A stretch of 64,000 nucleotides of DNA, from positions 372,001 to 436,000 of IMG/VR virus record IMGVR_UViG_3300037297_000066; one strand, written 5' to 3'. The translations under genes and the position numbers were made by a program. Under the pieces are notes generated by a model, which was not told where the DNA came from, searched no databases, and saw nothing but the letters and a program-made list of their open reading frames with translations. Each line of letters starts with the position of its first letter. The first letter of the stretch is position 1. Shown piece after piece: positions 43,926 to 61,824 of this stretch.

Positions 43926-44062
43926 GTCCGAAATGGGTCCGGAAGGAACGTTTCGCCATTCAGGATCGCATGATTGATGTGGTGAAGAAGACCATTGAAG
44001 CCGCTAAGGCTGAGAGAGACGCAGCCAAGAAGAGACTGAGGAAGCTGCAGTACGGAAGATAG
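43802..44062 (+). CDS. Small protein overlapping the upstream gene by 124 nt
   Basis: GAGGT Shine-Dalgarno before ATG 43802; basic helical C-terminus fills the gap to 44066. Alternative start 43970. Confidence 0.5.
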   Translation: MDRCKDQSGERNHSEEGTGAGEPVEEQEQDAEGTDETPDDVSPKWVRKERFAIQDRMIDVVKKTIEAAKAERDAAKKRLRKLQYGR

Positions 44063-44065
44063 TCT

Positions 44066-46375: not shown

Positions 46376-46380
46376 TAGGC

Positions 46381-47175: not shown

Positions 47176-48311
47176 GTTTCGACCGAAAGATCGATCAGGT
47201 ATGTCCCCACGAGGTGGTGGCAGAGCCCTTGTATTTGAGCACCGACAGGCAGACGGTTCGCCCACTTCGTCCTATCGGCTCATTTCGGTCTGTTCGGTTG
47301 CGGCTCAATGGCTTGATCGAGGTTCCAAGCGAAGGGGTACACATAGCTGCCAGGGCTATGGGTTCTAGACGGGGGCCCTTCAACATCACTTCTGGTGTCA
47401 ACGACTCGATGGTAGTGCAGGTGAATCAGGGAGACGAGCAGATACTCACGGCTCCTCCTGGCAATAGTATCCCAGCCTCTAACCTAGTTTCTGCACTGAA
47501 CCAGCAAATCAGCAAAGCTCGTTTTGAGGTCTTCAACGAGACCCTTCAGCTGAAGTCCGAAGCTATAGGCCCTTACGCCAGCCTCTTCATTGGTTCGTCA
47601 GGTAGTTTGGCTACTACTTTGGGGCTCACTCAGAATCGCCTGTGGCGTGGCGTCCAAACAGTGCCCGGTTGGTCATTGGTGAACCTGCCAGGGGCGCTTC
47701 CTGATCGACCCCTTCGTCTTGTTCTGTTTGACGAGAAGCTCAAAGGCTTTTCGGACTACGTGGAGTTGGATTACGCCACTATTCGGCAAGAGTGTCGTCG
47801 TTGTGGAGGAGTGGGGGTAGAGAACGACTGGCGCTACACTCAGCAAGGAAATACTGTCGAGGTTCGAGACGAGGCTCTTTTGATCCAGGAGATCCTCAAG
47901 TTCACCTACACAGTCAAAGGTTCCAACCGATTCCATGGCTGGTACGGAACTAGCGTCTTGACGGTGGTGGGACAGAAGTTGTCGAACGGGGGCTTGGTTC
48001 AGAACATCCTTTCATCTGAGTTGCAGGAAGGGTTTCGTCGTTGGCAGAACATCAAGAAGCAGCAGGAAGAGACCGTGGGGCAAGAGGTCTCTGACGCTGA
48101 GTATCCTCTAGCAATCTCTGCCGTCAACGTCGAGCAGAGCACGGAAGATCCAACGGTCATTTACGTTGGAACCACCGTCATCAATCGTTCTCGGCAACCT
48201 ATTCAGATAGAGCGAGGAGTCAGAGTCCCAGAACCTTTGGACCTACTTGGATCAACAGCGCAAGAAGGTGTGATTCGTCAGTCTCTCAGTGGCTACTCTC
48301 GTATCGGGTAA
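47172..48311 (+). CDS. gp25-like sheath initiator/wedge protein with extra domains
   Basis: C-terminal LLIQEILK...T.KGSN.FHGWYGT...Q...AE is gp25-like; CPH and CRRC ligands; sheath-like FNITSGVND domain. Confidence 0.7.
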   Translation: MSFDRKIDQVCPHEVVAEPLYLSTDRQTVRPLRPIGSFRSVRLRLNGLIEVPSEGVHIAARAMGSRRGPFNITSGVNDSMVVQVNQGDEQILTAPPGNSIPASNLVSALNQQISKARFEVFNETLQLKSEAIGPYASLFIGSSGSLATTLGLTQNRLWRGVQTVPGWSLVNLPGALPDRPLRLVLFDEKLKGFSDYVELDYATIRQECRRCGGVGVENDWRYTQQGNTVEVRDEALLIQEILKFTYTVKGSNRFHGWYGTSVLTVVGQKLSNGGLVQNILSSELQEGFRRWQNIKKQQEETVGQEVSDAEYPLAISAVNVEQSTEDPTVIYVGTTVINRSRQPIQIERGVRVPEPLDLLGSTAQEGVIRQSLSGYSRIG

Positions 48312-48320
48312 GTCTTTGGT

Positions 48321-48351
48321 CTCTGCTGGTGAGCCGCAGAGCTGGCTTTGT
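48321..48351 (+). terminator. Possible terminator hairpin
   Basis: CTCTGC-t-GG-tgag-CC-GCAGAG followed by ctggctttgt; weak U-tract. Confidence 0.3.
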
Positions 48352-48429
48352 TAGAACTCATTTCTCCCTGAAAGAATCTATGTCAACCCAAAATTATCCT
48401 TTTTGAGGGAAAGCCTCGGGTAAGCAACG

Positions 48430-51400
48430 ATGGCTACAGCACCACAGATCAATCTCAGAGACGGCTCGGGCACATCCCAGACGATTGAGTACTCCACCAA
48501 CATGGAGTTCGCTACGATCGAGGGGACCATCGATACCACTACGGTGGATCTTCAGGTGTCTGTCAATGGGTCTGCCTTTGTTTCTGACCCCACCCTGGTG
48601 AAGTTGGATGCTCAGACCTTCATAGTACCCAACCCTGCTTCGTTGCCTGACGGGTTGTCTCTGGACATCGGTATAAACACGATCCAACTTCGTGCCATTG
48701 GTATTTCGGGGGACGTGAGTGCGGCTTCCACGGCTACCATTACTCGGCTCGAACCTACGGATGACGACGGTACCATTCCTTCGGGGATACGGGTTCGTAG
48801 GCACCGGAACTACATTGACATTCTTGTAGCTAAGCCACAGTTTTCAGCGGGCCTTACGCTTGACCTGGCTCAGTTGCCGCTTCAATTCAGAGGCTTCAAC
48901 ATCTACGCCTCAGCGGCACCAGGAGGGACCACAGGGTACTTCAAGGTCAATGAAAGCCTCCTGACTGAGGCAGGTACCTATGAGGAAGACACCAATACCA
49001 TCCAGCAGTACAGCACGGTATTTGAGCCTGAGGCTCAGTATGTTCGGGTGGTGGTGACTCAGGAAGACGAGTTTGGAAACGAGATTCACAGGAACCTTGA
49101 TTCCTCGTTCAGTGTGTTGGGTTACTCTAACGACCTTCGTTTCTCGGGTACTCTAGATAACCGAAAGTTGACGGAGTTCATCTCCTTTTCGCACAACCGT
49201 TCTGGGGGCGCCGGAATCATCAACAGTGATAGGTTCTTGAATGTTCAGTCTACTGACCCTCTTTACTACGTTGTCACGGCTGTCTACTACGATGCAGATC
49301 TGAACCGAGAGTTCGAAACCCCTTATTCTCAAGAGGTTTTGGGAGCGCCCTTAATCATTGACACTAACATCACCGATTTGCCTGGTAGAAATCAGCTTCA
49401 GATCATTACCAGTTTCGTGGATGATGTACAGAGGGTAAACCAGGAGATCAGTCTTCTGCCAGGGTCCACTACCCGAGATGTGAGCATCGACCCCTTCTCT
49501 AGTGAGGCCGAGCGTATTTGGTTCATCATCGACTTTGTTCACCGAAGTCAGTCTTTCGTAACCCTTCTTCAGATCGATGACTCCAACGGAGATGGGGTGT
49601 CGGATTTGGTGTCGGGAAGTGCTTACAAGACAGCTCTCAAAGCAGCCCTTGGGTACTCCACGGATTCGGCTGTTCAGCAGCTAATCGATGCTCAATTCGA
49701 TAAGCTGGCCAAGAATGTGCAGAAGACTCGCCTCCCTGGGCGTCAGGCGGTAGGGGAAGCGGTTTTCTACAAGGCGGTTCGTCCTACCGAAGACATTACC
49801 ATCGCCTCAGGTACGACAGTTTCTACTAACGCAGACTCTGCCTCAGGACTTGCTTCGGTCAGGTTTGTTGTGGGGGGCACCTACGTGATGGTGGCTGCTA
49901 ATGCAGACGCCTACTACAATTTCGACAACCAACGTTACGAGATCACAACCGACATTTCAGCGGAGACCATTGGAAGTGCCGGAAACCGTCCTGCAGGAAG
50001 CATCAAGAACGTTCAGGGTTCGGTAGGGGGTCTGCAGGTCACCAACGTAGAAGCAACGGTTTTCGGTAACAACCGGGAATCCAATGCAGCCTTAGCGGCT
50101 CGGGCTCAGCTTGGATTTGTCAGTGTGGATACGGGAACCGAAGGGGGCTATCAGTCTACCTCGGCCGAACAGACTGGAATCATCAAGAGCAAGATCGTCA
50201 AGAGTGGAGATCCTCTGATGATGAGGGATTGGGACGAGGTCCGAAAGAAGCACATTGGGGGCAAGGTAGATATCTGGATTCAGGGTCTGCGGGAGCGAAC
50301 TGTCACGGAAAGGTTTGCTTTCACCTTCGAGATCGCCCGAGACATTCGGTGTGAGATCATCGATTTGGCCAACCTCATTTTCCGAGTGCAAGACTCTCGG
50401 GTCACAGTTGATACCCCCATCATGGATATCCTGAACGACTCCGTTCACGGGTTGGGCGTCAGAAATGTTACTCTAGGCTTGGACTACGATCTGACGGGGG
50501 TGACTATCCTCGACTATGAAACCTTCCAGATCGACAATTCCATTCCTCAGCCGGCTACGGCTATCGACGACATCATCACTGCAGACTACCGTTTCCGATC
50601 CATCAACCAGTTCACCTTCAGCCTTCAGCCGGTACGTCGAGTGGTGTCCGTGGTGGGGACTGAGTCCGGGGCTCTGGACAACAGCTTGGGGTACGATCTG
50701 TACAAAACTGACGATCCCCTTCTGGATGGCGAAAGCACGATCGCTCAGAACTACTTGGTCATCAACCAAGTAGGAGGCATTCCTACAGGAGCTACGATCC
50801 CGGTCAACGGGGAAGAGCATGTGCTGATTGGGTTCTTCCAAGAACCTCTTGGAAGCGTAGGTATCAATACAGCGACCCTTCGAGTCTTCAGTGAGGACGG
50901 GCTTATCGAGTATGACGGCCCCTCTGCTTCCAGCCCGGATTACGAGATCGTTGAGGGAACCTCAACCACTCCCATCAAGATCGTTCGTACAGCTTCTTCG
51001 GCGATCCTCAGTGGTCAGACAGTCAGTGTGGACTACGACCACGACGAAAACTTCACAGTCACTTACGTGATCAACGATTTGGTGCAGGAGTTGCAACGCA
51101 CGGTGAACACTCGGCGACACACAACTGCCGATGTGCTGGTCAAGCAGGCTGTCGAAAATGAGCTGGACTTGGAGACTACCGTACAGCTCAAGCTGGGGGC
51201 CAAAAAGGACAAGGCTGATCCGGCCATTCGGTCAAGTGTCTCTATTGAGACCAACTCCAAGATCATTGGGGCAGGCTTGGCGCAATCTGACGTAATCCAG
51301 GCTGTAGACTCCACAGAGGGCGTTGACTTCCAAGTTCTACCCTTGGCCCAGATGGGATACTCCGATGGCTCCTTGAGGCTCAGAGAGGCCGTATTGAGCA

Positions 51401-51882
51401 GTTATGTGCCTCTCCCCTACTACAACACCGGGGCCAATCTGGTCTACCTCCTCACCAATCCACTGCAGTACCCCACCACAGATGGTGGAGGTCTCGAAGT
51501 GGAACACAAGGGGGTGTTCCAAGACGATGAGGCCATGCTCCTTGCTACCAGTCTTGCTGTCGTCAAGTTGAATGACTTCTCGGCTTGGATCATCGGGGAC
51601 GATGGGGCTGTCATTCCCGAATACTCTGACGATGCCACCCTTGTCAGTGAAGGTTTCACGGATCCTGATGACATCGAGACTGAGCGTCTTCGTAGGACGG
51701 CCAACCACATTGTGGTGTCTATCGCTGGAGGGGGAACTCCGGTGGATACCCCAGCGAACCACAGCTATGCCGTGAGCTATGTGGTGAGAAACGACAAGGG
51801 ACCTCACAACATCGTCAGCTCGGACGTGGAGCACTTGTCCATGGGCAACTTTACCCTCACTTGTAGGGAGGTCACGAGCTAA
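48430..51882 (+). CDS. Baseplate J/gp6-like wedge protein with N-terminal Ig/FN3 domains
   Basis: PGSTTRDV.IDP; FDKLAKN...R..GR.A.G...F; GSAGN; VTN.....G.NRESN..LA.R; GGKVDIWI. Confidence 0.85.
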   Translation: MATAPQINLRDGSGTSQTIEYSTNMEFATIEGTIDTTTVDLQVSVNGSAFVSDPTLVKLDAQTFIVPNPASLPDGLSLDIGINTIQLRAIGISGDVSAASTATITRLEPTDDDGTIPSGIRVRRHRNYIDILVAKPQFSAGLTLDLAQLPLQFRGFNIYASAAPGGTTGYFKVNESLLTEAGTYEEDTNTIQQYSTVFEPEAQYVRVVVTQEDEFGNEIHRNLDSSFSVLGYSNDLRFSGTLDNRKLTEFISFSHNRSGGAGIINSDRFLNVQSTDPLYYVVTAVYYDADLNREFETPYSQEVLGAPLIIDTNITDLPGRNQLQIITSFVDDVQRVNQEISLLPGSTTRDVSIDPFSSEAERIWFIIDFVHRSQSFVTLLQIDDSNGDGVSDLVSGSAYKTALKAALGYSTDSAVQQLIDAQFDKLAKNVQKTRLPGRQAVGEAVFYKAVRPTEDITIASGTTVSTNADSASGLASVRFVVGGTYVMVAANADAYYNFDNQRYEITTDISAETIGSAGNRPAGSIKNVQGSVGGLQVTNVEATVFGNNRESNAALAARAQLGFVSVDTGTEGGYQSTSAEQTGIIKSKIVKSGDPLMMRDWDEVRKKHIGGKVDIWIQGLRERTVTERFAFTFEIARDIRCEIIDLANLIFRVQDSRVTVDTPIMDILNDSVHGLGVRNVTLGLDYDLTGVTILDYETFQIDNSIPQPATAIDDIITADYRFRSINQFTFSLQPVRRVVSVVGTESGALDNSLGYDLYKTDDPLLDGESTIAQNYLVINQVGGIPTGATIPVNGEEHVLIGFFQEPLGSVGINTATLRVFSEDGLIEYDGPSASSPDYEIVEGTSTTPIKIVRTASSAILSGQTVSVDYDHDENFTVTYVINDLVQELQRTVNTRRHTTADVLVKQAVENELDLETTVQLKLGAKKDKADPAIRSSVSIETNSKIIGAGLAQSDVIQAVDSTEGVDFQVLPLAQMGYSDGSLRLREAVLSSYVPLPYYNTGANLVYLLTNPLQYPTTDGGGLEVEHKGVFQDDEAMLLATSLAVVKLNDFSAWIIGDDGAVIPEYSDDATLVSEGFTDPDDIETERLRRTANHIVVSIAGGGTPVDTPANHSYAVSYVVRNDKGPHNIVSSDVEHLSMGNFTLTCREVTS

Positions 51883-52694
51883 TGCCCCGCTTCATGTTTG
51901 ACCCAAATCGGGTCAACTACAGCATCCACAAGAAGGGCAAAGAGTACAATCTACTGGTTTTGCAGAGGGCTCAGTCCATTTTCTCGACCTTGCTAGACCT
52001 CCTTCCCAGCAACTGGATCAGTGGAGTGCAAGGCCCGAGCTACACACTGGAACTCAAGGCTGTTGCCGTAGAACTGGCCAAAATCGAGATAGCTCTGGAG
52101 GATGTGAATCGGGATATTTCCTTCGAGACCACTCGTAGTGAGTTCCTTCAGTCGATCGTGGGCTACCTGGTTTTCGTCAACGGCAAGATCCCTCCTATGG
52201 AGTATGACGACGTTGAATTTCGTCGTTTTCTCCTCACTCTCATTCGGATCTACTTTCAAGGTTCGATTCCGGAGGCTCTCAAGGACGCTGTAGACCTATT
52301 TTTGACCGAAGAGTCGGATTTCATAGAGAACTTTCTCCTGGTTCGGCAGGGGGCTTCTGGGTACGACATCAGCGATCAGTTCGGTTTTCAGGCGACAGTG
52401 GACACAGGCGGGGTGTTCCCGGAAAACGCTTTTGCCCTCCAGGCGGCTCTAGGAACCATCATGGACGTGATCCGGCCGGCCCATACGCTCTACCGGATTC
52501 GATACCTCTTCACCGATGACTACATCCCCAATGGGGACGATATCAACCGCATTTTGGACGAGAGTCGGTGGCGTTTGGCCTGCTACTACTACGAAGATTT
52601 TCGGACCTATTGTGCTGGGATCAAGGATCGGGACCGTTTGGGGCGGAAAACTAACCAGGCGGTGGTCGGGGAAGACCACAGTCAGGATTTCTAA
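51882..52694 (+). CDS. Baseplate wedge protein (gpI/gp7-like)
   Basis: DVEFRRFL...GSIPEAL...IRPAHT; coupled to baseplate J. Confidence 0.7.
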   Translation: MPRFMFDPNRVNYSIHKKGKEYNLLVLQRAQSIFSTLLDLLPSNWISGVQGPSYTLELKAVAVELAKIEIALEDVNRDISFETTRSEFLQSIVGYLVFVNGKIPPMEYDDVEFRRFLLTLIRIYFQGSIPEALKDAVDLFLTEESDFIENFLLVRQGASGYDISDQFGFQATVDTGGVFPENAFALQAALGTIMDVIRPAHTLYRIRYLFTDDYIPNGDDINRILDESRWRLACYYYEDFRTYCAGIKDRDRLGRKTNQAVVGEDHSQDF

Positions 52695-52729
52695 CGGTTT
52701 TATGGGCCCGCTAGAGAGCAGGAGGCCCT

Positions 52730-53248
52730 ATGCAGATCAAACTCCGAGCCCGAGCCCGAGTCCGGGTTCACCAAGAGCGCCCCTATTGCTACGACAAGAA
52801 GAGGGGTCTCTGGCTTTACCGGCAGGTAGGGGAGGATGAAGAGGCGGGAAACATCGTCACAAATGCGGGTTTGGTAGCTCTTCATACCTACATCTACGGG
52901 ACAACTGCTCAACGGACAGCCGGTGGTTTGAGTGGCACAGGATTCAATTACATCGCTTTGTCCAATGATGCCGCTGCTCCAGCAGCCTCTGACACATCCC
53001 TGACCGGGGAACTTTCTGGGGATGGTCTCACTCGGGCAGCAGGGTCGGTGACATTGCCCACGGGGGCAGGCACTGCCACTGAGATTTCCCATGCCTTTAC
53101 CTACACAGGGGTCTCTCAAGGAGTCCGTAAGACAGCTCTTTTTGACGACTCCTCTAGCGGGAAGATGGCGCATGAGATTCAGTTCACCCAGCGGGTTCTA
53201 GTCACCAACGACGTTCTGACGCTCACCTTCTCGATCACGATTTCCTAG
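52730..53248 (+). CDS. Small fibre-attachment/baseplate protein
   Basis: NIVTNAG...YIALS...DTSL.GEL...ALFD..S.G.M...D.LTLT is a typical fibre-proximal domain. Confidence 0.6.
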   Translation: MQIKLRARARVRVHQERPYCYDKKRGLWLYRQVGEDEEAGNIVTNAGLVALHTYIYGTTAQRTAGGLSGTGFNYIALSNDAAAPAASDTSLTGELSGDGLTRAAGSVTLPTGAGTATEISHAFTYTGVSQGVRKTALFDDSSSGKMAHEIQFTQRVLVTNDVLTLTFSITIS

Positions 53249-53260
53249 GGGCTCTAGTCA

Positions 53261-56200
53261 ATGGCCGCCATAGCTCTCATCAAGTTCACTCAAGGGCCTA
53301 ACACAGACATTGCAGGTCGAGCCGTCGTTGGAACTCCCTACGGTGTGGACGGCTCTGTGGTGGTCTCGAACGACGACCCTACTGACATTCATCACTGGAA
53401 GGTCTACCTGGTCAGTGCCCCTCCCGGGAGCGCTCTGGAGCTAGCTACTCAGGGAGATTGGACTCTACTCAACGAAGGAGTCAGCAACACCCCGACGGCC
53501 AGCTTCAATCCGGACATTGCCGGTAGCTACCGTATCTTGCTTCAGGTTTGGGATGTCGCCAACAACCTGAACCAAGACATTCGAAACTTCATCATCCTGG
53601 ATGATGGTGACTTCATCCTGCCTCCTTTCCAGAAGCTTCCAGACCCTCTTCCGCTACCCAATCCTCAAGACCCTAGTGACGTCCAGAAACCTAATGAGAT
53701 GAACGTTGGGGGGCAGCCCTATGGCTGGATGGGCAACACCAGCTATCAGCTTCATCATCAGCTCATCAAGCATGTGGCTACTTTGGTGCCGTCTCCTGGG
53801 GCAGGCGACACAAGCAAGATCTACGTGGTCACAGGCGCCGGATCTGTAGCTTTTTCGTTCTTGGTTGATGCCAACATCGATGCTGCTGCGGCTATTGATG
53901 TTTCGAAGTTAGCTCCAGGTACGAACGGATACGTGTTGACCACGAGTGGAGGAGTCCCTGTCTGGGCGGCTCCTTCTGGTGGAGGGCTTACACCCCCTAG
54001 CGGAGCTGGGGACATAGCAAAGCTGGCCTTTGCAGATGCCGCTGGAACTGACCTGGATTATGCCGATGGTGTCAAGGTCAAGAATGCTGGGACCACTCAA
54101 AATGGTCTTGAGTTTGGTACGGCAAGCATTGAGAACGAAAGTGATGACCTCGTATTCAATGTGGCTACAGGTCAAGCCCACATCCTCCAAGAGAATACCA
54201 CGGAGTTTGCCCGGTTTGATTTAGGCTCTGGAGGGAGCACGCCTCGGCTACTGTTTGCCAACGATGGGGCGGTTGTCTTGCCCGGGGATGGGTATGTGCT
54301 TTTCGGGGATGGGACTGCACCTTCTACCGGAGCGATCCGAGTGGGCGGTGCTTTCACTACTGGAAGCCCTGTAATTATTCCAGTGATGGTTGCTTACAAG
54401 AATAGCAACGATCGCAATATCATCAGCTATATAGCTCCAGAGGGTCCTCCTTCTTCGCTAGCCTTCGGAGACTTCTCTGAGCCTACTCAGATTCTGGGGA
54501 CTTCTGTTGGGATCCAGACCGGTTACTTCGGTGTCAACTCATCCGGAGAGATCAGGTTTGCTGCCTCCAGCAATGCCACTGGCTTGCATTTGCTAGCTAG
54601 TGGGCTTGTGAAGATCGTAGGTGGTTCTACAGATCGCGTACTAGAGTTCGATGCTTCTCAGGACGCGATCGTTCGCTGCGCTGCTTGGACGGCTGGAATA
54701 CATCCTGGAGACAACCTGACGATTCTGGCTGGAGAAGCCTTCGGCTCCGGGCAGCCTGGAGGCCAACTCAGATTGGCCAGTGGTCCCGGAAGTACTCCAG
54801 GTACTAATGATGGGGATCTGGAGTTCTACGTTGGAGGAACGTCTGGGACGAAGGTTCTAGTCTTCGACGTCGATACGGTTGCCCCGACTGATGGTCAGGT
54901 GTTGACCTGGAGTGCCACGAACGCTGCTGCTGAGTGGGTTACACCTGGAGGTGGATCTGGGGACGTAGTTGGCCCAGCTTCAGCTACAGACAACGCTGTT
55001 GCCCGTTTTGACACCACAACAGGGAAGCTGATTCAGGACTCCGTCTTCCTGGTTGACGATAGCGGCAACGTTACCGGAGCTGGGACTTACAACGGGGAAA
55101 CCGTTGCTAACCTGATCCATGACAATGTAGCGGGAGAGATCGCAGCCGTTACAGAGAAGGCCAGTCCGGTTTCAGCGGACCTAGTGCTGATTGAAGACTC
55201 GGCAGATTCGAACAACAAGAAGAGAGTCCAAGTTGGGAACCTTCCAGGTGGTGGATCTGGAGACGTAGTTGGCCCAGCTTCAGCTACGGACAACGCTGTT
55301 GCTCGTTTTGACACCACAACAGGGAAGCTGATCCAGGATTCGGTCTTCTTGGTTGACGACAGCGGAAACGTCACTGGTGCTGGCACCTACAATGGTGAGA
55401 CAGTCGCTAACCTGATCCATGACAACGTGGCCGGAGAAATTGCGGCTGTCACGGAGAAGGCTACTCCTGTCTCAGCTGATGTTCTCCTGATCGAAGACTC
55501 GGCAGATTCGAACAACAAAAAGAGGATCCAGATTGGAAACCTTCCGGCCTCTTCTGGAGACGTGGTCGGGCCCGGGTCGGCCACGGACAATGCCGTAGCC
55601 AGATTCGACACAACCACAGGGAAGCTCATCCAGGACTCCGTCTTCCTGATTGACGATAGTGGAAACGTCACAGGAGCGGGTACTTACAATGGTGAGACGG
55701 TTGCTAACCTGATCCATGACAACGTGGCAGGGGAGATCATAGCTGTCACAGAGAAGGCTACCCCGGTTTCTGGAGATGTTCTCCTGATCGAGGACTCAGC
55801 TGATTCCAACAACAAGAAGAGAGTCCAGGTCGGCAACCTTCCTACGGGAGGAGCTGGCTCCGATACTACAGCCATTCATGATGACACGGCAGCTGAGATC
55901 TCTGCCATTACAGAGAAAGCAACTCCCGTCAGTGCTGACCTTCTATTGATTGAGGACTCGGCAGATTCGAACAACAAGAAGAGGGTTCAAGTTGGGAACC
56001 TCCCCTCTTCCTCTGGGGACGTTGTAGGCCCAGCTTCTGCCACCGATAACGCTGTTGCCCGGTTCGACACAACCACAGGGAAGCTCATCCAGGATTCGGT
56101 CTTCCTGGTTGACGATAGTGGAAATGTCACAGGTGCAGGGACTTACAACGGGGAAACAGTAGCCAACCTGATCCATGACAATGTGGCAGGGGAGATCACT

Positions 56201-59200
56201 GCTGTCACTCTGAAAGCTACCCCGGTTTCTGGAGATGTTCTCCTGATCGAGGACTCGGCAGATTCCAACAACAAGAAGAGGATCACGGTTGGAAGTCTCC
56301 CCTCTTCCTCTGGGGACGTAGTTGGCCCAGCTTCAGCTACAGACAACGCTGTTGCCCGGTTTGATACCACAACCGGGAAACTGATTCAGGACTCTGTTTT
56401 CCTGGTGGATGATAGTGGCAACGTCACAGGGGCAGGGACTTACAACGGGGAAACCGTAGCAAATCTGATCCATGACAACGTGGCAGGAGAGATCACTGCT
56501 GTCACCGAGAAAGCAACTCCCGTCAGTGCTGACGTTCTATTGATTGAGGACTCGGCAGACTCAAACAACAAGAAGAGGGTTCAAGTTGGGAACCTCCCCA
56601 CGGGAGGGGCTGGTTCTGATACAACGGCTATTCACGATGACACTGCTGGAGAGATCTCAGCCGTTACAGAGAAGGCAACTCCCGTCAGTGCTGACCTCCT
56701 CTTGATCGAGGATTCAGCAGATTCCAACAACAAGAAACGAGTTCAGGTAGGCAACCTCCCGAGCTCCTCAGGGGATGTGGTGGGTCCTGCTTCGGCGACA
56801 GACAATGCCGTTGCCAGGTTTGACACGACTACCGGAAAACTCATCCAGGATTCGGTCTTCCTGGTTGACGATAGCGGGAATGTCACGGGAGCAGGAACCT
56901 ACAACGGGGAAACGGTAGCCAATCTCCTACATGACAACGTAGCTGGGGAAATCGCAGCTGTCACAGAGAAGGCTACCCCAGTCTCGGCTGACCTTGTTCT
57001 GATTGAAGACTCGGCAGACTCAAACAACAAGAAGAGGGTCCAGGTTGGGAACCTCCCTGGAGGGGGCTCTGGGGACGTGGTAGGTCCCGCTTCTGCTACG
57101 GACAACGCTATTGCCCGGTTCGACACGACCACTGGAAAGCTGATTCAAGACTCCGTTTTCTTGGTTGACGACAGTGGCAACGTCACCGGGGCTGGGACTT
57201 ACAACGGAGAAACGGTTGCGAATCTGATCCATGACAATGTAGCGGGAGAGATCTCAGCTGTTACTCTGAAGGCCACTCCGGTCAGTGCTGACCTTCTTCT
57301 GATTGAAGACTCGGCAGACTCGAACAACAAGAAGAGGATCACGGTTGGAAGCCTCCCCTCTTCCTCTGGAGACGTTGTGGGGCCGGCTTCAGCGACAGAC
57401 AACGCTGTTGCCCGGTTTGATACGACCACAGGCAAGCTCATCCAAGACTCAGTCTTCCTGGTGGATGATAGTGGCAACGTCACAGGCGCCGGCACATACA
57501 ATGGTGAGACGGTAGCGAACCTGATTCACGACAACGTGGCAGGGGAGATCACAGCTGTCACTCTGAAGGCCACTCCGGTCAGTGCCGACGTTCTTTTGAT
57601 CGAGGATTCGGCAGACTCGAACAACAAGAAGAGGATTACGGTTGGAAGCCTGCCTTCTTCCTCTGGGGACGTAGTTGGCCCAGCTTCGGCCACGGACAAT
57701 GCTGTTGCCCGTTTTGATACTACCACTGGCAAACTCATTCAAGACTCTGTCTTCTTGGTTGACGACAGCGGCAACGTCACTGGTGCGGGAACATACAATG
57801 GTGAGACGGTTGCTAACCTAATCCATGATAACGTAGCCGGGGAGATCACAGCTGTCACTGAAAAGGCTACCCCCGTTTCAGCAGACGTTCTTCTGATCGA
57901 GGACTCGGCTGATTCAAACAACAAGAAGAGAGTCCAGATTGGGAACCTCCCCACAGGATCAGATCCGGACGCCATCCATGACAATGTGGCCTCTGAGATC
58001 TCAGCCGTTACAGAGAAGACCACTCCCGTCTCGGCAGATTTGATCCTGATCGAGGACTCGGCTGATTCAAACAACAAGAAGAGAGTCCAGATTGGGAACC
58101 TCCCCTATTCTTCAGGGGACGTGGTAGGTCCTGCTTCAGCTACGGACAACGCTGTTGCCCGTTTTGACACCACAACCGGGAAACTGATTCAGGACTCCGT
58201 CTTCCTGGTGGATGATAGCGGCAACGTCACCGGGGCTGGGACTTACAACGGAGAGACAGTAGCAAATCTGATCCACGATAACGTGGCAGGGGAGATCACA
58301 GCTGTTTCTCTGAAGGCCACTCCGGTTTCCGGAGATGTTCTCCTCATTGAGGACTCAGCTGATTCTAACAACAAGAAGAGGATCACGGTTGGGAGTCTCC
58401 CGAGCTCTTCCGGGGACGTTGTGGGACCGGCGAGTGCCACGGATAATGCAGTTGCTCGCTATGACACTACCACCGGGAAGCTCATCCAGGACTCAGTCTT
58501 CCTGGTTGATGATAGTGGAAATGTCACGGGTGCGGGAACATACAACGGAGAGACTGTTGCCAATCTGATTCACGACAACGTGGCCGGAGAGATCACAGCG
58601 GTAACAGAGAAGGCAACTCCTATCAGTGCTGACGTTCTCCTGATCGAGGACTCAGCTGATTCGAACAACAAGAAGAGGGTTCAGATCGGAAACCTCCCCA
58701 CGGGAGGGGCTGGCTCTGATACCACTGCCATCCATGATGACACAGCGGGAGAGATCGCAGCTGTCACGGAGAAGGCCACTCCGGTCTCGGCAGATTTGAT
58801 CCTGATCGAGGACTCAGCTGATTCGAACAACAAGAAGAGGGTTCAGATCGGAAACCTTCCTGGAGGTGGCTCAGGAGACGTAGTTGGCCCAGCTAGCGCT
58901 ACAGACAATGCAGTAGCCAGGTTCGACACCACAACAGGGAAACTAATCCAAGACTCAGTTTTCCTAGTTGACGACAGTGGGAATGTCACGGGTGCGGGAA
59001 CATACAACGGTGAGACTGTTGCCAATCTGATTCACGACAATGTGGCAGGAGAGATCTCAGCTGTTACTCTGAAGGCCACTCCTGTCAGTGCTGATGTTAT
59101 CCTGATCGAAGACTCAGCCGATTCGAACAACAAGAAAAGGATCACGGTTGGAAGCCTCCCGAGCTCTTCTGGGGATGTTGTAGGGCCGGCGAGTGCCACA

Positions 59201-61006
59201 GACAACGCTGTAGCAAGGTTCGACACGACCACCGGGAAGCTGATTCAGGACTCAGTATTCTTGGTTGATGACAGTGGAAACGTTACGGGCGCCGGTACCT
59301 ACAACGGGGAAACGGTTGCCAATCTGATTCATGACAATGTAGCAGGGGAAATCTCGGCTGTTACAGAGAAGGCAACTCCTGTCAGTGCTGACGTTCTCCT
59401 GATTGAGGACTCGGCAGACTCCAACAACAAGAAGAGGGTCCAGGTTGGAAACCTTCCAGGAGGAGGGGCTGGTTCTGACACTACAGCCATCCATGATGAC
59501 ACTGCTGGAGAGATCTCAGCCATCACGGAGAAGGCAACTCCGGTCTCGGCCGATCTAATTCTGATTGAGGATTCAGCTGATTCGAACAACAAGAAGAGAG
59601 TCCAAGTTGGGAACCTGCCCTCTTCCTCTGGGGACGTTGTAGGACCTGCCAGTGCTACGGACAACGCAGTAGCCAGATTCGACACAACCACAGGGAAGCT
59701 CATCCAAGATTCAGTCTTCCTCGTTGACGACAGCGGGAACGTTACCGGGGCAGGAACCTACAACGGAGAAACCGTAGCGAACCTGATTCACGATAACGTG
59801 GCGGGAGAGATCACGGCTGTCACTCTGAAAGCAACCCCGGTCAGTGCCGACGTTCTTCTGATTGAAGACTCCGCAGACTCCAACAACAAGAAGAGGATCA
59901 CGGTTGGGAGTCTCCCGAGCTCTTCCGGGGATGTAGTTGGACCCTCTTCAGCCACAGACAATGCAGTGGCTAGGTTCGACACAACCACTGGAAAACTCAT
60001 TCAGGACTCTGTTTTCCTGGTTGACGACAGTGGAAATGTCACAGGGGCAGGGACCTACAATGGAGAGACCGTTGCCAATCTAATTCACGACAACGTGGCC
60101 TCTGAGATCTCAGCCATTACGGAGAAGGCTACTCCAGTCTCGGCAGACCTTCTCTTGATTGAGGATTCTGCGGACTCGAACAACAAGAAGAGAGTCCAAG
60201 TTGGGAACCTCCCAGGTGGTGGCTCAGGAGATGTTGTAGGGCCGGCTTCGGCCACGGACAATGCAGTAGCCAGGTTCGACACCACAACAGGGAAGCTGAT
60301 TCAGGACTCTGTCTTCTTGGTTGACGACAGTGGAAATGTCACGGGGGCGGGCACCTACAATGGTGAAACAGTCGCCAACTTGATCCATGACAATGTGGCA
60401 GGAGAGATCACAGCTGTCACAGAGAAGGCTACGCCGGTCTCAGCTGACGTTCTTCTGATCGAGGATTCAGCCGATTCCAACAACAAGAAGAGGGTTCAGG
60501 TTGGCAACCTTCCGGGCGGGGGTGCTGGTTCTGATACCACTGCCATTCACGATGACACGGCAGCTGAGATCTCTGCCATTACAGAGAAAGCAACGCCGGT
60601 CAGTGCTGACCTCCTATTGATTGAGGACTCGGCAGATTCGAACAACAAGAAGAGGGTTCAAGTTGGGAACCTCCCCTCGGGAGGCAGTACTGTAACCTTC
60701 ATCAGTCCTTCTCAAATCACTTCCGATCAGAACAACTACGCTCCGACAGACTGGAGTACGGCGAATGCCGTAAGGTTGAGCTCCGATGCTTCTCGTAACA
60801 TCACGGGGTTGAATGGGTCTGCTAGTGTGGTCAAGAAGATTCTGATTAACGTGGGGTCCTACAACATTGTTTTGCAGCATGAGAACAGTAGTTCTACGGC
60901 TGCCAATCGGCTCATTGTGTCTGGAGGGTCTGACTTGACAGTACAACCAAATGATGCTGTGACTGTGCTATACGACCCTGTAACGACCCGTTGGAGGGTT
61001 GTCTAA
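53261..61006 (+). CDS. Long tail fibre-like protein with two-module repeat shaft
   Basis: 2581 aa; N-terminal Ig-like domain, fibre motifs (TDGQVLTW), 16 A and 22 B modules, C-terminal ~100-aa beta domain. Confidence 0.85.
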   Translation: MAAIALIKFTQGPNTDIAGRAVVGTPYGVDGSVVVSNDDPTDIHHWKVYLVSAPPGSALELATQGDWTLLNEGVSNTPTASFNPDIAGSYRILLQVWDVANNLNQDIRNFIILDDGDFILPPFQKLPDPLPLPNPQDPSDVQKPNEMNVGGQPYGWMGNTSYQLHHQLIKHVATLVPSPGAGDTSKIYVVTGAGSVAFSFLVDANIDAAAAIDVSKLAPGTNGYVLTTSGGVPVWAAPSGGGLTPPSGAGDIAKLAFADAAGTDLDYADGVKVKNAGTTQNGLEFGTASIENESDDLVFNVATGQAHILQENTTEFARFDLGSGGSTPRLLFANDGAVVLPGDGYVLFGDGTAPSTGAIRVGGAFTTGSPVIIPVMVAYKNSNDRNIISYIAPEGPPSSLAFGDFSEPTQILGTSVGIQTGYFGVNSSGEIRFAASSNATGLHLLASGLVKIVGGSTDRVLEFDASQDAIVRCAAWTAGIHPGDNLTILAGEAFGSGQPGGQLRLASGPGSTPGTNDGDLEFYVGGTSGTKVLVFDVDTVAPTDGQVLTWSATNAAAEWVTPGGGSGDVVGPASATDNAVARFDTTTGKLIQDSVFLVDDSGNVTGAGTYNGETVANLIHDNVAGEIAAVTEKASPVSADLVLIEDSADSNNKKRVQVGNLPGGGSGDVVGPASATDNAVARFDTTTGKLIQDSVFLVDDSGNVTGAGTYNGETVANLIHDNVAGEIAAVTEKATPVSADVLLIEDSADSNNKKRIQIGNLPASSGDVVGPGSATDNAVARFDTTTGKLIQDSVFLIDDSGNVTGAGTYNGETVANLIHDNVAGEIIAVTEKATPVSGDVLLIEDSADSNNKKRVQVGNLPTGGAGSDTTAIHDDTAAEISAITEKATPVSADLLLIEDSADSNNKKRVQVGNLPSSSGDVVGPASATDNAVARFDTTTGKLIQDSVFLVDDSGNVTGAGTYNGETVANLIHDNVAGEITAVTLKATPVSGDVLLIEDSADSNNKKRITVGSLPSSSGDVVGPASATDNAVARFDTTTGKLIQDSVFLVDDSGNVTGAGTYNGETVANLIHDNVAGEITAVTEKATPVSADVLLIEDSADSNNKKRVQVGNLPTGGAGSDTTAIHDDTAGEISAVTEKATPVSADLLLIEDSADSNNKKRVQVGNLPSSSGDVVGPASATDNAVARFDTTTGKLIQDSVFLVDDSGNVTGAGTYNGETVANLLHDNVAGEIAAVTEKATPVSADLVLIEDSADSNNKKRVQVGNLPGGGSGDVVGPASATDNAIARFDTTTGKLIQDSVFLVDDSGNVTGAGTYNGETVANLIHDNVAGEISAVTLKATPVSADLLLIEDSADSNNKKRITVGSLPSSSGDVVGPASATDNAVARFDTTTGKLIQDSVFLVDDSGNVTGAGTYNGETVANLIHDNVAGEITAVTLKATPVSADVLLIEDSADSNNKKRITVGSLPSSSGDVVGPASATDNAVARFDTTTGKLIQDSVFLVDDSGNVTGAGTYNGETVANLIHDNVAGEITAVTEKATPVSADVLLIEDSADSNNKKRVQIGNLPTGSDPDAIHDNVASEISAVTEKTTPVSADLILIEDSADSNNKKRVQIGNLPYSSGDVVGPASATDNAVARFDTTTGKLIQDSVFLVDDSGNVTGAGTYNGETVANLIHDNVAGEITAVSLKATPVSGDVLLIEDSADSNNKKRITVGSLPSSSGDVVGPASATDNAVARYDTTTGKLIQDSVFLVDDSGNVTGAGTYNGETVANLIHDNVAGEITAVTEKATPISADVLLIEDSADSNNKKRVQIGNLPTGGAGSDTTAIHDDTAGEIAAVTEKATPVSADLILIEDSADSNNKKRVQIGNLPGGGSGDVVGPASATDNAVARFDTTTGKLIQDSVFLVDDSGNVTGAGTYNGETVANLIHDNVAGEISAVTLKATPVSADVILIEDSADSNNKKRITVGSLPSSSGDVVGPASATDNAVARFDTTTGKLIQDSVFLVDDSGNVTGAGTYNGETVANLIHDNVAGEISAVTEKATPVSADVLLIEDSADSNNKKRVQVGNLPGGGAGSDTTAIHDDTAGEISAITEKATPVSADLILIEDSADSNNKKRVQVGNLPSSSGDVVGPASATDNAVARFDTTTGKLIQDSVFLVDDSGNVTGAGTYNGETVANLIHDNVAGEITAVTLKATPVSADVLLIEDSADSNNKKRITVGSLPSSSGDVVGPSSATDNAVARFDTTTGKLIQDSVFLVDDSGNVTGAGTYNGETVANLIHDNVASEISAITEKATPVSADLLLIEDSADSNNKKRVQVGNLPGGGSGDVVGPASATDNAVARFDTTTGKLIQDSVFLVDDSGNVTGAGTYNGETVANLIHDNVAGEITAVTEKATPVSADVLLIEDSADSNNKKRVQVGNLPGGGAGSDTTAIHDDTAAEISAITEKATPVSADLLLIEDSADSNNKKRVQVGNLPSGGSTVTFISPSQITSDQNNYAPTDWSTANAVRLSSDASRNITGLNGSASVVKKILINVGSYNIVLQHENSSSTAANRLIVSGGSDLTVQPNDAVTVLYDPVTTRWRVV
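54956..60676 (+). repeat. Intragenic tandem repeat: 16 x 53-aa module A and 22 x 44-aa module B
   Basis: A = SGDVVGPASATDNAVARFDTTTGKLIQDS...ANL; B = IHDNVAGEI...IEDSADSNNKKRVQVGNLP. Period 297-300 nt for AB and about 450-462 nt for ABB. Confidence 0.97.
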
Positions 61007-61722
61007 TGACTTTTTTGCTGAAGCAGTTGTCTGGGGGCGGGGCTGGCTCGATTCTGACTCAAGTTTCAATTCCAGGTTTTAGTGGGGAGGCTTCCAACAC
61101 GTATACTACATGGGGGGTTATAGGATCATTTGCTCTAGATCCTTCCGACTTTCCAGGAACCTACACGTTTGAGTCGGTACTTGAAGTGACGGATACCTAC
61201 ACTGCGGAGGTTCGGTTGTATGATGTGACCGCTGCCGCAGCTGTATCTGGATCTACTCTGAGTTCCACGTCCGATACTCCTGAGATAGTTTCTGCTTCGA
61301 TCACTCCTGCCAGTGGGGCCCGTGTTTACGAGGTGCAGCTGAGAGTAACCGCTACAGGAGGAACAGCTGTCTGCAAGTTCGCTACGCTGAGGGTGGGACA
61401 GTTTGCGAGCCTTACGATCTCCCCCGCTCAGATCACAGCAAACCAGAACAACTACTCACCGACTGACTGGAGCACAGCGACACATGTTCGGTTGAATACG
61501 GACGCTTCGAGGGATATCACCGGGTTCAGTGCGACTGCAGACATGAAACTCAAGGTCATCATCAATGTAGGGTCCTCAGATCTGGTTCTGAAGCATGAGA
61601 GCGCTAGTTCAGATGCTTCAAACCGAATACTTGTCCCGAGTGCTTCTGATCTCACCCTGGGAGCCGGAGATGCGGTGAACCTGTACTATGATGATACTTC
61701 CTCTCGGTGGAGGTGTGTCTGA
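61006..61722 (+). CDS. Fibre-associated protein sharing the fibre's C-terminal domain
   Basis: Start probably 61006 (TAATG coupling); ends ISPAQITANQNNYSPTDWSTA...SRWRCV. Confidence 0.75.
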   Translation: MTFLLKQLSGGGAGSILTQVSIPGFSGEASNTYTTWGVIGSFALDPSDFPGTYTFESVLEVTDTYTAEVRLYDVTAAAAVSGSTLSSTSDTPEIVSASITPASGARVYEVQLRVTATGGTAVCKFATLRVGQFASLTISPAQITANQNNYSPTDWSTATHVRLNTDASRDITGFSATADMKLKVIINVGSSDLVLKHESASSDASNRILVPSASDLTLGAGDAVNLYYDDTSSRWRCV

Positions 61723-61781
61723 TGACGTTCATACTAGTCAGGGCAGTAACGGTGAGTGGGTGTTGGGAACACGTTAGATAG
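61722..61781 (+). pseudogene. 19-codon remnant MTFILVRAVTVSGCWEHVR
   Basis: TGATG-coupled; its junction mirrors the one at 61006 (MTFLL). Confidence 0.3.
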
Positions 61782-61824
61782 GGGCAAAAGGACCCCCCGA
61801 GCAGCTGAATAGACTGGAGAAAAT

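What the first reader, a model, noticed from the sequence alone, without database searches (positions are those of the whole stretch)
54956..60676. Fibre repeats nearly invariant in protein but codon-scrambled, including TCN/AGY serine switches
Seen: module A is identical in most of its 16 copies, yet adjacent copies differ at many third codon positions. One Ser (GPAS) is TCA, TCG, TCT, AGT or AGC in different copies (for example 54980 TCA versus AGT near 58433), which needs double changes. This implies very strong purifying selection on old repeats, or selection to limit recombinational collapse.
Basis: partly seen in the sequence, partly recalled or inferred. Interest (0 to 1): 0.6.

Follow-up and report, generated by a model that had tools for sequence, protein, structure and literature searches.

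The report
Codon-scrambled repeats in a phage tail fibre
A giant phage's tail-fibre gene repeats two ~50-residue modules 38 times with almost the same protein each time but heavily reshuffled synonymous codons, which is best explained by very strong protein-level selection on old copies that still occasionally recombine.

Summary
One ORF (53261-61006, 2581 aa) of a 437-kb phage holds 16 copies of module A (53 aa) and 22 of a related module B (44 aa) at 54956-60676. Eleven of the 16 A copies are protein-identical, yet A copies are only 80% identical in DNA. Their synonymous sites are at 87% of full scrambling (omega about 0.004-0.01). The GPAS serine is TCN in 12 copies and AGY in copies 11-14. 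A second serine, in module B, is AGT in 10 of 22 copies.

Purifying selection is confirmed independently. 38 of 40 differences in other populations' contigs are synonymous third positions, and an orthologous array has pS 0.112 against pN 0.004. A homotrimer model puts almost every residue at a chain interface, which would explain the constraint.

"Selection to avoid recombination" gets no support. Exact matches reach 65 nt, longer than in scrambled or permuted nulls. Codon identity is above random, not below, and neighbouring copies are no more different than distant ones.

The array is not frozen. Strains differ by 162-nt and 297-nt unit deletions and by clustered synonymous patches, one of which swaps AGT for TCT in the same copy. 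The serine switches therefore need few origins. The evolutionary pattern is like polyubiquitin. The module family is widespread and unannotated.

The parts
53261..61006 (+). Tail-fibre ORF, 2581 aa (P0001)
   Evidence: It is the only long open frame here. It lies downstream of a Baseplate_J-like gene. The window is bases 372001-436000 of a 437,331-bp virus record with terminal repeats.
53261..54955 (+). Non-repeat N-terminal region (aa 1-565)
   Evidence: No Pfam, PHROG or NCBIfam hit. It is about 99% identical to relative L088 up to 54324.
54324..54776 (+). Segment replaced in the close relative (mosaic breakpoint)
   Evidence: L088 is 98.96% identical over 43278-54324. There is no blastn match over 54324-54776, then 84% identity. 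The protein also differs here.
54956..60676 (+). Repeat array: 16 module A plus 22 module B
   Evidence: TRF finds periods of 297-300 with 75-82% matches.
54956..55114 (+). Module A copy 1, GPAS Ser = TCA
55256..55414 (+). Module A copy 2, Ser TCA
55553..55711 (+). Module A copy 3, Ser TCG (variants A8G, V33I)
56012..56170 (+). Module A copy 4, Ser TCT
   Evidence: Its codons 5-11 equal the L129 version of copy 13.
56309..56467 (+). Module A copy 5, Ser TCA
   Evidence: It shares a 47-nt concordant tract with copy 1.
56768..56926 (+). Module A copy 6, Ser TCG
57068..57226 (+). Module A copy 7, Ser TCT (V15I)
57365..57523 (+). Module A copy 8, Ser TCA
57662..57820 (+). Module A copy 9, Ser TCG
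   Evidence: L129 seems to have no counterpart of this copy.
58112..58270 (+). Module A copy 10, Ser TCA
   Evidence: L129 carries an A10/A11 hybrid.
58409..58567 (+). Module A copy 11, Ser AGT (F18Y)
58871..59029 (+). Module A copy 12, Ser AGC
59168..59326 (+). Module A copy 13, Ser AGT here, TCT in L129
59627..59785 (+). Module A copy 14, Ser AGT
59924..60082 (+). Module A copy 15, Ser TCA (A8S)
60224..60382 (+). Module A copy 16, Ser TCG
55115..55246 (+). Module B copy 1 (type E), PVS Ser TCA
55415..55546 (+). Module B copy 2 (E), Ser TCA
55712..55843 (+). Module B copy 3 (E), Ser TCT
55874..56005 (+). Module B copy 4 (extra B'), Ser AGT
   Evidence: It is 97% identical to copy 22.
56171..56302 (+). 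Module B copy 5 (type L), Ser TCT
56468..56599 (+). Module B copy 6 (E), Ser AGT
56630..56761 (+). Module B copy 7 (B'), Ser AGT
56927..57058 (+). Module B copy 8 (E), Ser TCG
57227..57358 (+). Module B copy 9 (L), Ser AGT
57524..57655 (+). Module B copy 10 (L), Ser AGT
57821..57952 (+). Module B copy 11 (E), Ser TCA
57974..58105 (+). Module B copy 12 (B'), Ser TCG
58271..58402 (+). Module B copy 13 (L), Ser TCC
58568..58699 (+). Module B copy 14 (E), Ser AGT
58730..58861 (+). Module B copy 15 (B'), Ser TCG
59030..59161 (+). Module B copy 16 (L), Ser AGT
59327..59458 (+). Module B copy 17 (E), Ser AGT
59489..59620 (+). Module B copy 18 (B'), Ser TCG
59786..59917 (+). Module B copy 19 (L), Ser AGT
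60083..60214 (+). Module B copy 20 (E), Ser TCG
60383..60514 (+). Module B copy 21 (E), Ser TCA
60545..60676 (+). Module B copy 22 (B'), Ser AGT
55943..56007 (+). Longest exact direct repeat, first arm (65 nt)
   Evidence: Fully re-drawn codons give 28 +/- 4 nt.
60614..60678 (+). Longest exact direct repeat, second arm
58638..58799 (+). 162 nt (54 codons, the length of one extra B with its linker) skipped in a contig of run X1
   Evidence: The joint runs 58637 to 58800, with 58 nt fitting both sides, at depth 14. The skipped bin has depth 2.85, against 13.7 and 20.7 in the flanking bins.
59179..59200 (+). Patch of 7 differences in 22 nt against the orthologous array, including AGT/TCT
60677..61006 (+). 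C-terminal beta-sandwich domain
   Evidence: AF2 pLDDT 91.9. There are weak fold matches to phage tailspike domains. It is 100% identical in L129, and related domains at 36-57% identity occur in many viral and metagenome contigs.
48430..51882 (+). Upstream baseplate gene (context)
   Evidence: Pfam Baseplate_J, E 1.1e-8, 35.2 bits against a cut-off of 21.1

Best explanation
The array encodes the shaft of a homotrimeric tail fibre of a 437-kb phage. It is built from two distantly related ~50-residue modules (A x16, B x22).

The copies are old at the DNA level: their synonymous sites have drifted almost to the phage's codon-usage equilibrium. The protein is held nearly constant by very strong purifying selection on every copy. 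The likely reason is that the three chains intertwine, so almost every residue sits at an inter-chain contact.

The array is not frozen. Unequal recombination at the longest surviving identical stretches removes whole units. Short patches of about 20-140 nt are exchanged between copies or between lineages. Because the copies encode the same protein, such exchanges are invisible to selection. They shuffle synonymous variants, including the TCN or AGY state of two serines, among copies. Each serine switch therefore needs to have arisen only once or a few times.

The DNA divergence does slow collapse and does make the array assemblable from short reads, but it looks like a by-product of age plus protein constraint, not a selected design.

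Shown: the repeat anatomy, the dN/dS figures, the run-length tests, and the strain differences. Inferred: the trimer as the cause of the constraint, and the donor of the patches.
For: - Anatomy.
- Paralogs: module A has pS 0.712, which is 87% of the 0.815 expected for fully re-drawn codons. Corrected dS is about 1.7 and omega about 0.01. Module B has pS 0.63, 76% of saturation.
- Codon identity between copies is 0.439 (A) and 0.544 (B), against 0.356 and 0.385 for independent draws.
- No genealogy: Mantel A-matrix vs B-matrix r=0.04; identity vs distance r=0.11.
- Population level: 38 of 40 listed differences in contigs of three other runs are synonymous third positions.
- Orthologous array L129: Sd 59, Nd 6, pS 0.112, pN 0.0038.
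- Genome-typical omega on the 11-kb backbone against L088 is 0.076.
- Dynamics: a 162-nt deletion joint at a 58-nt shared stretch. L129 lacks two 297-nt units and holds an A10/A11 hybrid. B copies 4 and 22 are 97% identical inside flanks of 82-85%.
- Differences from L129 are clustered: 14 adjacent differing codons against 4.95 expected, P=4e-4. Array pS is 2.2 times that of the flanks, Fisher P=1e-4.
- 54 of 57 variant codons exist in a paralogous copy, against 47.5 expected, P=0.01.
- Copy 13 is AGT here and TCT in L129, within 7 differences in 22 nt.
- Trimer: ipSAE 0.93 against a best control of 0.02. That mark was reached by 20 of 30 proteins solved as pairs of one chain and by 1 of 23 solved as single chains. 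The runs agree in at least 87% of contacts and pLDDT is at least 88. My own alignment and three copies were used, so those counts hold only roughly. Nearly all of residues 6-105 are at the interface. The monomer model reaches only pLDDT 68.
- Fibre context: Baseplate_J upstream and a tailspike-like C-terminal sandwich.
- The pattern recurs in an unrelated contig (P0004/L089): nine 73-aa units with aa identity 0.91, nt identity 0.775 and codon identity 0.46.
Against: - In most other proteins of the family the copies are much less alike (median within-array aa identity 0.59). The fold alone therefore does not force invariance, and why this phage keeps its copies uniform is unexplained.
- The test for a single paralogous donor of the patches was not significant (P=0.42). 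The patches could equally come from recombination with diverged lineages.
- The 162-nt joint comes from a k=31 contig and could be a path artefact.
- No long read confirms the order of all 16 units.
- The trimer is a model, not a measurement.
Confidence: 0.7

Rival explanations
1. The synonymous divergence is itself selected. Variants that break up identical DNA between copies are favoured because they lower the rate of recombinational deletion of fibre units, making this a natural counterpart of engineered codon scrambling.
For: - Deletions do happen, and one sits at one of the longest identical stretches: the 162-nt joint at a 58-nt shared run.
- Two one-unit deletions are seen in L129.
- Engineered repeats are stabilised in the same way (papers listed, e.g. 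PMC12365220).
- No near-identical pair of full units exists.
Against: - Codon identity is higher, not lower, than for independent draws.
- The longest exact repeat is 65 nt, against 28-30 nt in scrambled nulls.
- In-register runs are longer than in a column-permutation null: A 17.5 vs 14.7, B 18.9 vs 17.4.
- Adjacent copies are no more diverged than distant ones.
- Age plus protein constraint already explains the pattern.
Confidence: 0.12
2. The copies did not diverge in place. The array was assembled and is continually re-assorted by recombination with other phage lineages that carry the same protein modules in diverged DNA, so the scrambling reflects a shared gene pool rather than the age of this array.
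For: - Relative L088 is 99% identical over 11 kb (pS 0.034). It then switches to pS 0.33-0.62 with nearly the same protein, and its first unit best matches our copy 8.
- Module B of an unrelated 142-kb contig (L009) differs from ours at only 2 of 44 residues.
- Array pS against L129 is twice that of the flanks.
Against: - The last 2.1 kb of the array is collinear and 95-99% identical in L129, so units are inherited vertically on that time-scale.
- This reading still requires the same purifying selection across lineages.
- It complements the main explanation rather than excluding it.
Confidence: 0.25
3. Assembly artefact: strain variants of a shorter array were strung together, or units were mis-ordered, by a short-read assembler.
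For: - No long read or single contig in the public runs spans the array. Logan pieces are 150-560 nt.
- The relative's assembly breaks inside the array.
Against: - All 30 bins are covered at 99% identity or more by independent contigs of run X1, including pieces that cross module junctions.
- L129 from another metagenome has the same order over seven modules A and eleven modules B, apart from unit deletions.
- Exact repeats are at most 65 nt, shorter than ordinary reads.
- The frame stays open for 2581 codons.
Confidence: 0.04

Closest known systems
Polyubiquitin genes (head-to-tail repeats with identical protein and many synonymous differences; purifying selection versus concerted evolution; background knowledge, see also PMC10457151 found)
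   Same: Both are tandem in-frame copies. The protein is almost invariant between copies and synonymous sites are strongly diverged. Constraint on the protein explains the pattern, with occasional homogenising events.
   Different: Here the units are not cleaved into monomers; they form one 2581-aa structural fibre. Two module types alternate. The host is a phage. The conserved sequence is lineage-specific, not universal (within-array identity elsewhere in the family has a median of 0.59).
DNA-homogenised repeat arrays of bacterial surface proteins and many phage fibres (concerted evolution; background knowledge)
   Same: Long arrays of structural modules whose copy number varies by unequal recombination. 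Unit deletions are seen here too.
   Different: Those arrays are near-identical in DNA. Here copies are 75-90% identical, with no distance effect.
Engineered codon scrambling of repetitive genes (PMC13642069, PMC12365220, PMC10094428)
   Same: The same outcome in sequence terms: identical protein repeats encoded by non-identical DNA, which limits recombination.
   Different: The natural array is not optimised. Exact matches reach 65 nt and codon identity is above random.
Serine codon-set switching at conserved serines (PMC6872785)
   Same: A conserved Ser is encoded by TCN in some copies and AGY in others. Thr/Ser alternation (ACT/AGT, ACT/TCT) occurs at two other columns of module B.
   Different: Here the two states are distributed among paralogous copies of one gene. 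They differ between orthologous copies of close strains inside a multi-substitution patch, which points to transfer of the state rather than repeated double mutation.
Unannotated A-type and B-type module arrays in giant phage proteins (P0002-P0120; loci L009-L087)
   Same: The same two modules, with the core GDVVGP..S.TDNA.ARFD.TTGK for A and IHDN....EI....K..P...D...IEDS for B. In P0002 the gene follows a Phage-tail_3/Rcc01698_C gene.
   Different: Elsewhere A or B mostly form arrays of one module type with much less uniform copies. Strict A-B alternation with near-invariant A is particular to this phage and its close relatives.

Membership tests
Phage tail fibre | Gene lies in the tail/baseplate module | tested here: met
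   The gene two upstream (48430-51882) has Baseplate_J at 35.2 bits against a cut-off of 21.1. All genes are on the same strand.
Phage tail fibre | Homotrimeric elongated shaft | tested here: inconclusive
   A three-copy model of one A-B unit scores 0.93 against a best control of 0.02. That mark was reached by 20 of 30 solved one-chain pairs and 1 of 23 single chains. Contacts agree in at least 87% and pLDDT is at least 88. The calibration holds only roughly. This is a model only.
Phage tail fibre | Distal receptor-binding or tailspike-like terminal domain | tested here: inconclusive
   The C-terminal 112 aa fold as a confident beta sandwich (pLDDT 91.9). The best PDB match is a phage tailspike depolymerase at E 3.9e-3, TM 0.52. 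Pfam Phage_depo_C scores 17.9-20.4 bits, below its cut-off of 25.
Phage tail fibre | Present in the virion and needed for adsorption | not testable with these tools
   The phage is uncultured and known only from a metagenome record.
Polyubiquitin-type evolution (protein-identical tandem repeats under purifying selection) | Copies identical or nearly so in protein | tested here: met
   11 of 16 A copies are identical, and the others differ by 1-2 residues.
Polyubiquitin-type evolution (protein-identical tandem repeats under purifying selection) | Synonymous divergence between copies far above non-synonymous | tested here: met
   pS 0.712 against pN 0.016 for A, omega about 0.01.
Polyubiquitin-type evolution (protein-identical tandem repeats under purifying selection) | Units released as separate functional monomers | not tested
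   No cleavage motif was sought. The units are modelled as a continuous fibre. The likeness is in evolutionary pattern only.
Concerted-evolution (DNA-homogenised) repeat array | Copies near-identical in DNA, neighbours most alike | tested here: not met
   Mean DNA identity is 0.80 (A) and 0.78 (B). The correlation with distance is r=0.11, not significant. Only one tract (B4/B22) reaches 97%.
Pfam fvmX3 (PF19999), DUF2963 (PF11178), DUF2585 (PF10755) | A single domain match above the curated threshold | tested here: inconclusive
   Whole-protein scores of 47-76 bits exceed the cut-offs, but no single stretch passes on its own. The scores are sums over many weak repeat matches. I do not file the modules under these families.
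Diversity-generating retroelement target | Variation concentrated at non-synonymous, adenine-templated positions | tested here: not met
   The variation is almost purely synonymous third positions of all four bases. No search for a reverse transcriptase was made.

The most novel reading that the evidence does not exclude
The array is a natural codon-scrambled gene. In a phage with very active recombination, selection acts on synonymous sites to keep identical runs between the 38 modules short enough that the fibre does not collapse. Neutral micro-conversion between protein-identical copies keeps re-shuffling the synonymous variants. It raises local synonymous divergence about two-fold and moves serine codons between the TCN and AGY sets without a non-serine intermediate.
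Probability: 0.12. Interest if true: 0.75.

Novelty: new variant of a known kind. Interest (0 to 1): 0.5.

Why it matters
- Tail fibres are usually among the fastest-changing phage proteins, and long repeats are usually either homogenised in DNA or free to diverge in protein. This array does neither. It gives a clean natural case of omega near 0.01 maintained in 38 parallel copies.
- The synonymous differences between copies act as markers. They let recombination, conversion and deletion inside a repeat array be read directly from strain comparisons.
- The finding flags a widespread and unannotated pair of fibre modules: 454 viral-contig stretches and over 200 giant proteins.
- It carries a caution for metagenomics. 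Only arrays that are scrambled in DNA assemble from short reads, so their apparent frequency is biased.
- If second-order selection on synonymous sites were shown, it would be a natural precedent for the codon scrambling used in synthetic biology.

Tried and rejected
- **Megablast against the phage collection:** no match.
- **Family scans of the repeats and N-terminal region (Pfam, PHROGs, NCBIfam):** only summed weak repeat hits, nothing usable.
- **Sequence search of the PDB:** nothing.
- **Protein atlas by features:** best score 0.89, unnamed viral clusters, a lead only. The first call failed on the length limit.
- **Joint MAFFT alignment of A and B fragments (A1):** it laid the A core on B. 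That is informative about A/B kinship but unusable for folding, so it was replaced by A2.
- **Monomer AF2 of one A-B unit:** pLDDT 68, not used for a fold search.
- **Natural A-then-B junctions in relatives:** none found with my narrow HMMs.
- **DNA for P0002 and P0006:** not available.
- **Single-donor test for conversion patches:** not significant, P=0.42. I therefore do not claim that a paralogous donor is proven.
- **Mantel tests for unit genealogy or a distance effect:** null.
- **GENECONV-style test on all 22 B copies:** not significant, P=0.63. On the A+B units, P=0.008.
- **Literature searches for a description of this pattern in phage fibres:** none found.
- **DGR idea:** rejected because the variation is synonymous.
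- **Another genetic code:** not needed, since the frame is open under table 11, although the genome has two tRNA(CUA) genes.
- **The large representative-protein search:** not run, because the word search already found more than 200 relatives.
Full report
**Where it is.** The window is bases 372001-436000 of a 437,331-bp IMG/VR virus record with direct terminal repeats, judged complete. Nearly all long ORFs are on the + strand. The genome carries 53 tRNA genes and a tmRNA, so this is a huge phage. The finding lies wholly inside one ORF, 53261-61006 (+), 2581 aa. The gene at 48430-51882 has a Baseplate_J domain, so the ORF sits in the tail module.

**Anatomy.**
- Residues 1-565 are non-repetitive and match no family.
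- From 54956 to 60676 the protein is built from two modules.
- Module A (53 aa) occurs 16 times.
- Module B (44 aa) occurs 22 times: once after every A, plus six extra copies (B') that follow a B.
- B has three protein subtypes (E, L and B') in the order EEExLExELLExLExLExLEEx.
- The last 110 residues fold as a confident beta sandwich (pLDDT 91.9). It has weak fold matches to phage tailspike domains (best E 3.9e-3, TM 0.52).
- When A and B fragments from many proteins were aligned together, MAFFT laid the A core on B. The shared pattern is (T/H)DN....h...T.K ... D.hhhh(D/E)DS. The two modules are therefore probably old relatives of each other.

**Checking the observation.**
- Eleven of the 16 A copies are identical over 55 residues. 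The others carry one or two singleton changes.
- DNA identity between A copies is 0.80 on average (0.75-0.90). Nei-Gojobori pS is 0.71 (0.38-0.90) overall and 0.70 for neighbours.
- The GPAS serine is TCA/TCG/TCT in 12 copies and AGT/AGC in copies 11-14.
- A second serine, in module B (PVS), is AGT in 10 of 22 copies and TCN in the rest.

**How scrambled is it?**
- Re-drawing every codon from the phage's own codon usage gives pS 0.815 for A and 0.826 for B. The observed values are 87% and 76% of that.
- With that ceiling, dS is about 1.7 (A) and 1.2 (B), and omega is 0.01 (A) and 0.08 (B).
- The A figure counts the serine switch as two non-synonymous steps. Real amino-acid differences are about 0.75 per pair in 53 residues, which by my arithmetic gives omega near 0.004.
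- Codon identity at shared residues is 0.439 (A) and 0.544 (B), against 0.356 and 0.385 for independent draws.
- The copies are therefore close to saturation but not beyond it.

**Is DNA identity minimised?** No.
- The longest exact direct repeat in the array is 65 nt (55943 and 60614), against 28 +/- 4 nt for re-drawn codons.
- In register, the mean longest run per pair is 17.5 nt (A) and 18.9 nt (B). This is above a null that permutes codons within columns (14.7 and 17.4), and every permutation falls below the observed value.
- Neighbours are not more diverged than distant copies. The similarity matrices of the A and B halves of the same units do not correlate (r=0.04), and identity does not fall with distance (r=0.11, P=0.14).
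- A few tracts are significantly long. B copies 4 and 22, which lie 4.7 kb apart, are 97% identical over 132 nt inside flanks of 82-85%.

**Independent evidence for purifying selection.**
- Logan contigs of four public runs from four different studies were laid on 54900-60800.
- Run X1 (wetland) covers all 30 bins with 54 pieces, all at 99% identity or more.
- Runs X2 and X3 hold close variants. Of the 40 differences listed, 38 are synonymous third positions. The other two are T>A and C>G at 54980-54981, the first two bases of the copy-1 serine codon. The third base was not shown, so I cannot tell whether that strain has AGY.
- Contig L129, from another metagenome, starts inside the array and is collinear with 58592-61006. 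In the array part Sd is 59 and Nd is 6 (pS 0.112, pN 0.0038, three residue differences in 695). The C-terminal domain has pS 0.012 and the next genes 0.04-0.07.
- On the 11-kb backbone shared with a second contig, L088, pS is 0.034 and omega 0.076. The array's omega is thus well below the local genome average.

**The array is dynamic.**
- *Fibre mosaicism.* L088 is 98.96% identical to the window up to 54324. It then has a replaced segment, and after that only 84% identity. Its first repeat unit best matches our copy 8, not copy 1. The unique 60 codons just before the array have pS 0.33 with one residue change. The distal fibre has therefore been exchanged between lineages that share the protein but not the codons.
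- *Unit deletions in L129.* L129 lacks two 297-nt units relative to the window. Its first A is copy-8-like and is followed directly by B11, and it holds one A that is copy-10-like at its 5' end and copy-11-like at its 3' end. Because the window's neighbouring copies are only 79-83% identical, these are deletions in L129's lineage, not recent duplications here.
- *A 162-nt deletion variant in X1.* One X1 contig joins 58637 to 58800, skipping 162 nt, the length of one extra B with its linker. Fifty-eight nt fit both sides. Its depth is 14, while the skipped bin has 2.85. This is either a real deletion variant or a path artefact of a k=31 assembly.
- *Clustered differences against L129.* There are 14 adjacent differing codons against 4.95 expected (P=4e-4). 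Array pS is 2.2 times that of the flanks (Fisher P=1e-4). Of 57 variant codons, 54 exist at the same column in another copy, against 47.5 expected (P=0.01).
- *The clearest patch.* At 59179-59200 in copy 13 there are seven differences in 22 nt, including AGT in the window against TCT in L129. The L129 version equals the window's copy 4 over 21 nt.
- *A caveat on the donor.* A formal test for a single paralogous donor over all patches was not significant (P=0.42). With 15-21 copies and few codon states a match is easy to obtain, so the donor could be a paralogous copy or a diverged lineage.

**The serine switches.**
- At the GPAS serine, AGY sits in four contiguous copies.
- In module B all ten AGY copies use AGT, and eight of the ten have the identical flanking codons GTC AGT GCT GAC.
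- In a related array (P0004/L089) the homologous GPAS serine is AGY in all nine copies. Two other serines use the opposite codon set from ours, and one column again mixes AGT/AGC with TCT. L009 shows another such mix.
- Thr/Ser alternations by one step (ACT/AGT and ACT/TCT) occur at two B columns, so the single-step intermediates are seen in the array.
- Few origins, followed by spread through duplication or patch transfer, explain the pattern. Many independent double changes are not needed.

**Why so constrained?**
- A monomer model of one A-B unit is poor (pLDDT 68).
- Three copies give a confident intertwined model. The score is 0.93 against a best control of 0.02. That mark was reached by 20 of 30 proteins solved as pairs of one chain and by 1 of 23 solved as single chains. 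The runs agree in at least 87% of contacts and pLDDT is at least 88. The counts hold only roughly, because my own alignment and three copies were used. Nearly all of residues 6-105 are at an interface.
- If that is right, a substitution changes three symmetric buried positions at once, which would account for strong constraint.
- It does not explain why this phage keeps copies uniform while most relatives do not. In 59 arrays of the family, the median within-array protein identity is 0.59.
- A requirement that all modules bind the same partner or ligand is possible but untested.

**The family.**
- The modules are widespread: 454 stretches in viral contigs and 211 long proteins.
- They mostly occur as arrays of A only or B only.
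- In one case the gene follows a Phage-tail_3/Rcc01698_C gene.
- No curated family describes them. The Pfam scores above threshold are sums of weak repeat matches with no single passing stretch.
- The scrambled-but-conserved pattern recurs in P0004: nine 73-aa units with aa identity 0.91, nt identity 0.775 and codon identity 0.46. L009 holds younger identical B copies at 83-96% DNA identity. This array is therefore the extreme of a continuum.

**Verdict.** The first half of the interpretation, strong purifying selection on old copies, is supported. The second half, selection against recombinational collapse, is not supported, although divergence clearly does limit collapse, and collapse is seen where identity persists. 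There is also an ascertainment effect: only arrays with diverged DNA can be assembled from short reads, and the relative's assembly breaks in its array. The evolutionary pattern is the one known from polyubiquitin (background knowledge; PMC10457151), here in a phage structural protein made of an unannotated module pair. I found no published description.

Noticed in passing
window 14596-19014 (+): A 1472-aa UvrD-type helicase is interrupted by an intein. The Intein_splicing match covers residues 617-945, between the UvrD N-terminal and C-terminal domains.
   Followed up: no
outside the window: genome C1 257557-257714: ARAGORN finds two adjacent tRNA genes with anticodon CTA, which would read TAG. 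They are among 53 tRNAs and a tmRNA, mostly clustered at 278-302 kb. The fibre ORF is open under table 11, so no recoding is needed here. Only one tRNA-Ser (TGA) is encoded, and none for AGY.
   Followed up: no
window 54956-60676; alignment A1: Modules A and B share a core pattern. MAFFT aligns the A core onto B, which suggests that both descend from one ancestral fibre module.
   Followed up: partly
window 60677-61006; loci L090-L208: The C-terminal beta-sandwich domain is very widespread. 39 viral loci and 110 metagenome stretches match at 36-57% identity, with invariant Q, D, TG, S and W positions. It often ends proteins with quite different upstream parts.
   Followed up: partly
L089 2753-7624 (P0004): In this other phage, module A alternates with a different 20-residue module bearing an H..RHE.GG.DEI motif, in nine 73-aa units. 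These units are likewise protein-conserved and codon-scrambled.
   Followed up: partly
window 10164-14423, 25144-28845, 31548-35270, 38070-43925 (+): Four ORFs of 1233-1951 aa have no Pfam family, or only a sub-threshold one (DUF2460 at 23.9 bits). The one also scanned against PHROGs (38070-43925) has no hit there either. They are presumably giant structural proteins of the tail.
   Followed up: no
window 61442-61813 vs L129: Identity to L129 drops from about 98% to 82-87% at the end of the gene after the fibre (60991-61722). The blastn alignments leave 61733-61812 unmatched, and identity returns to 97% from 61813. This is another small mosaic segment just downstream of the fibre.
   Followed up: no
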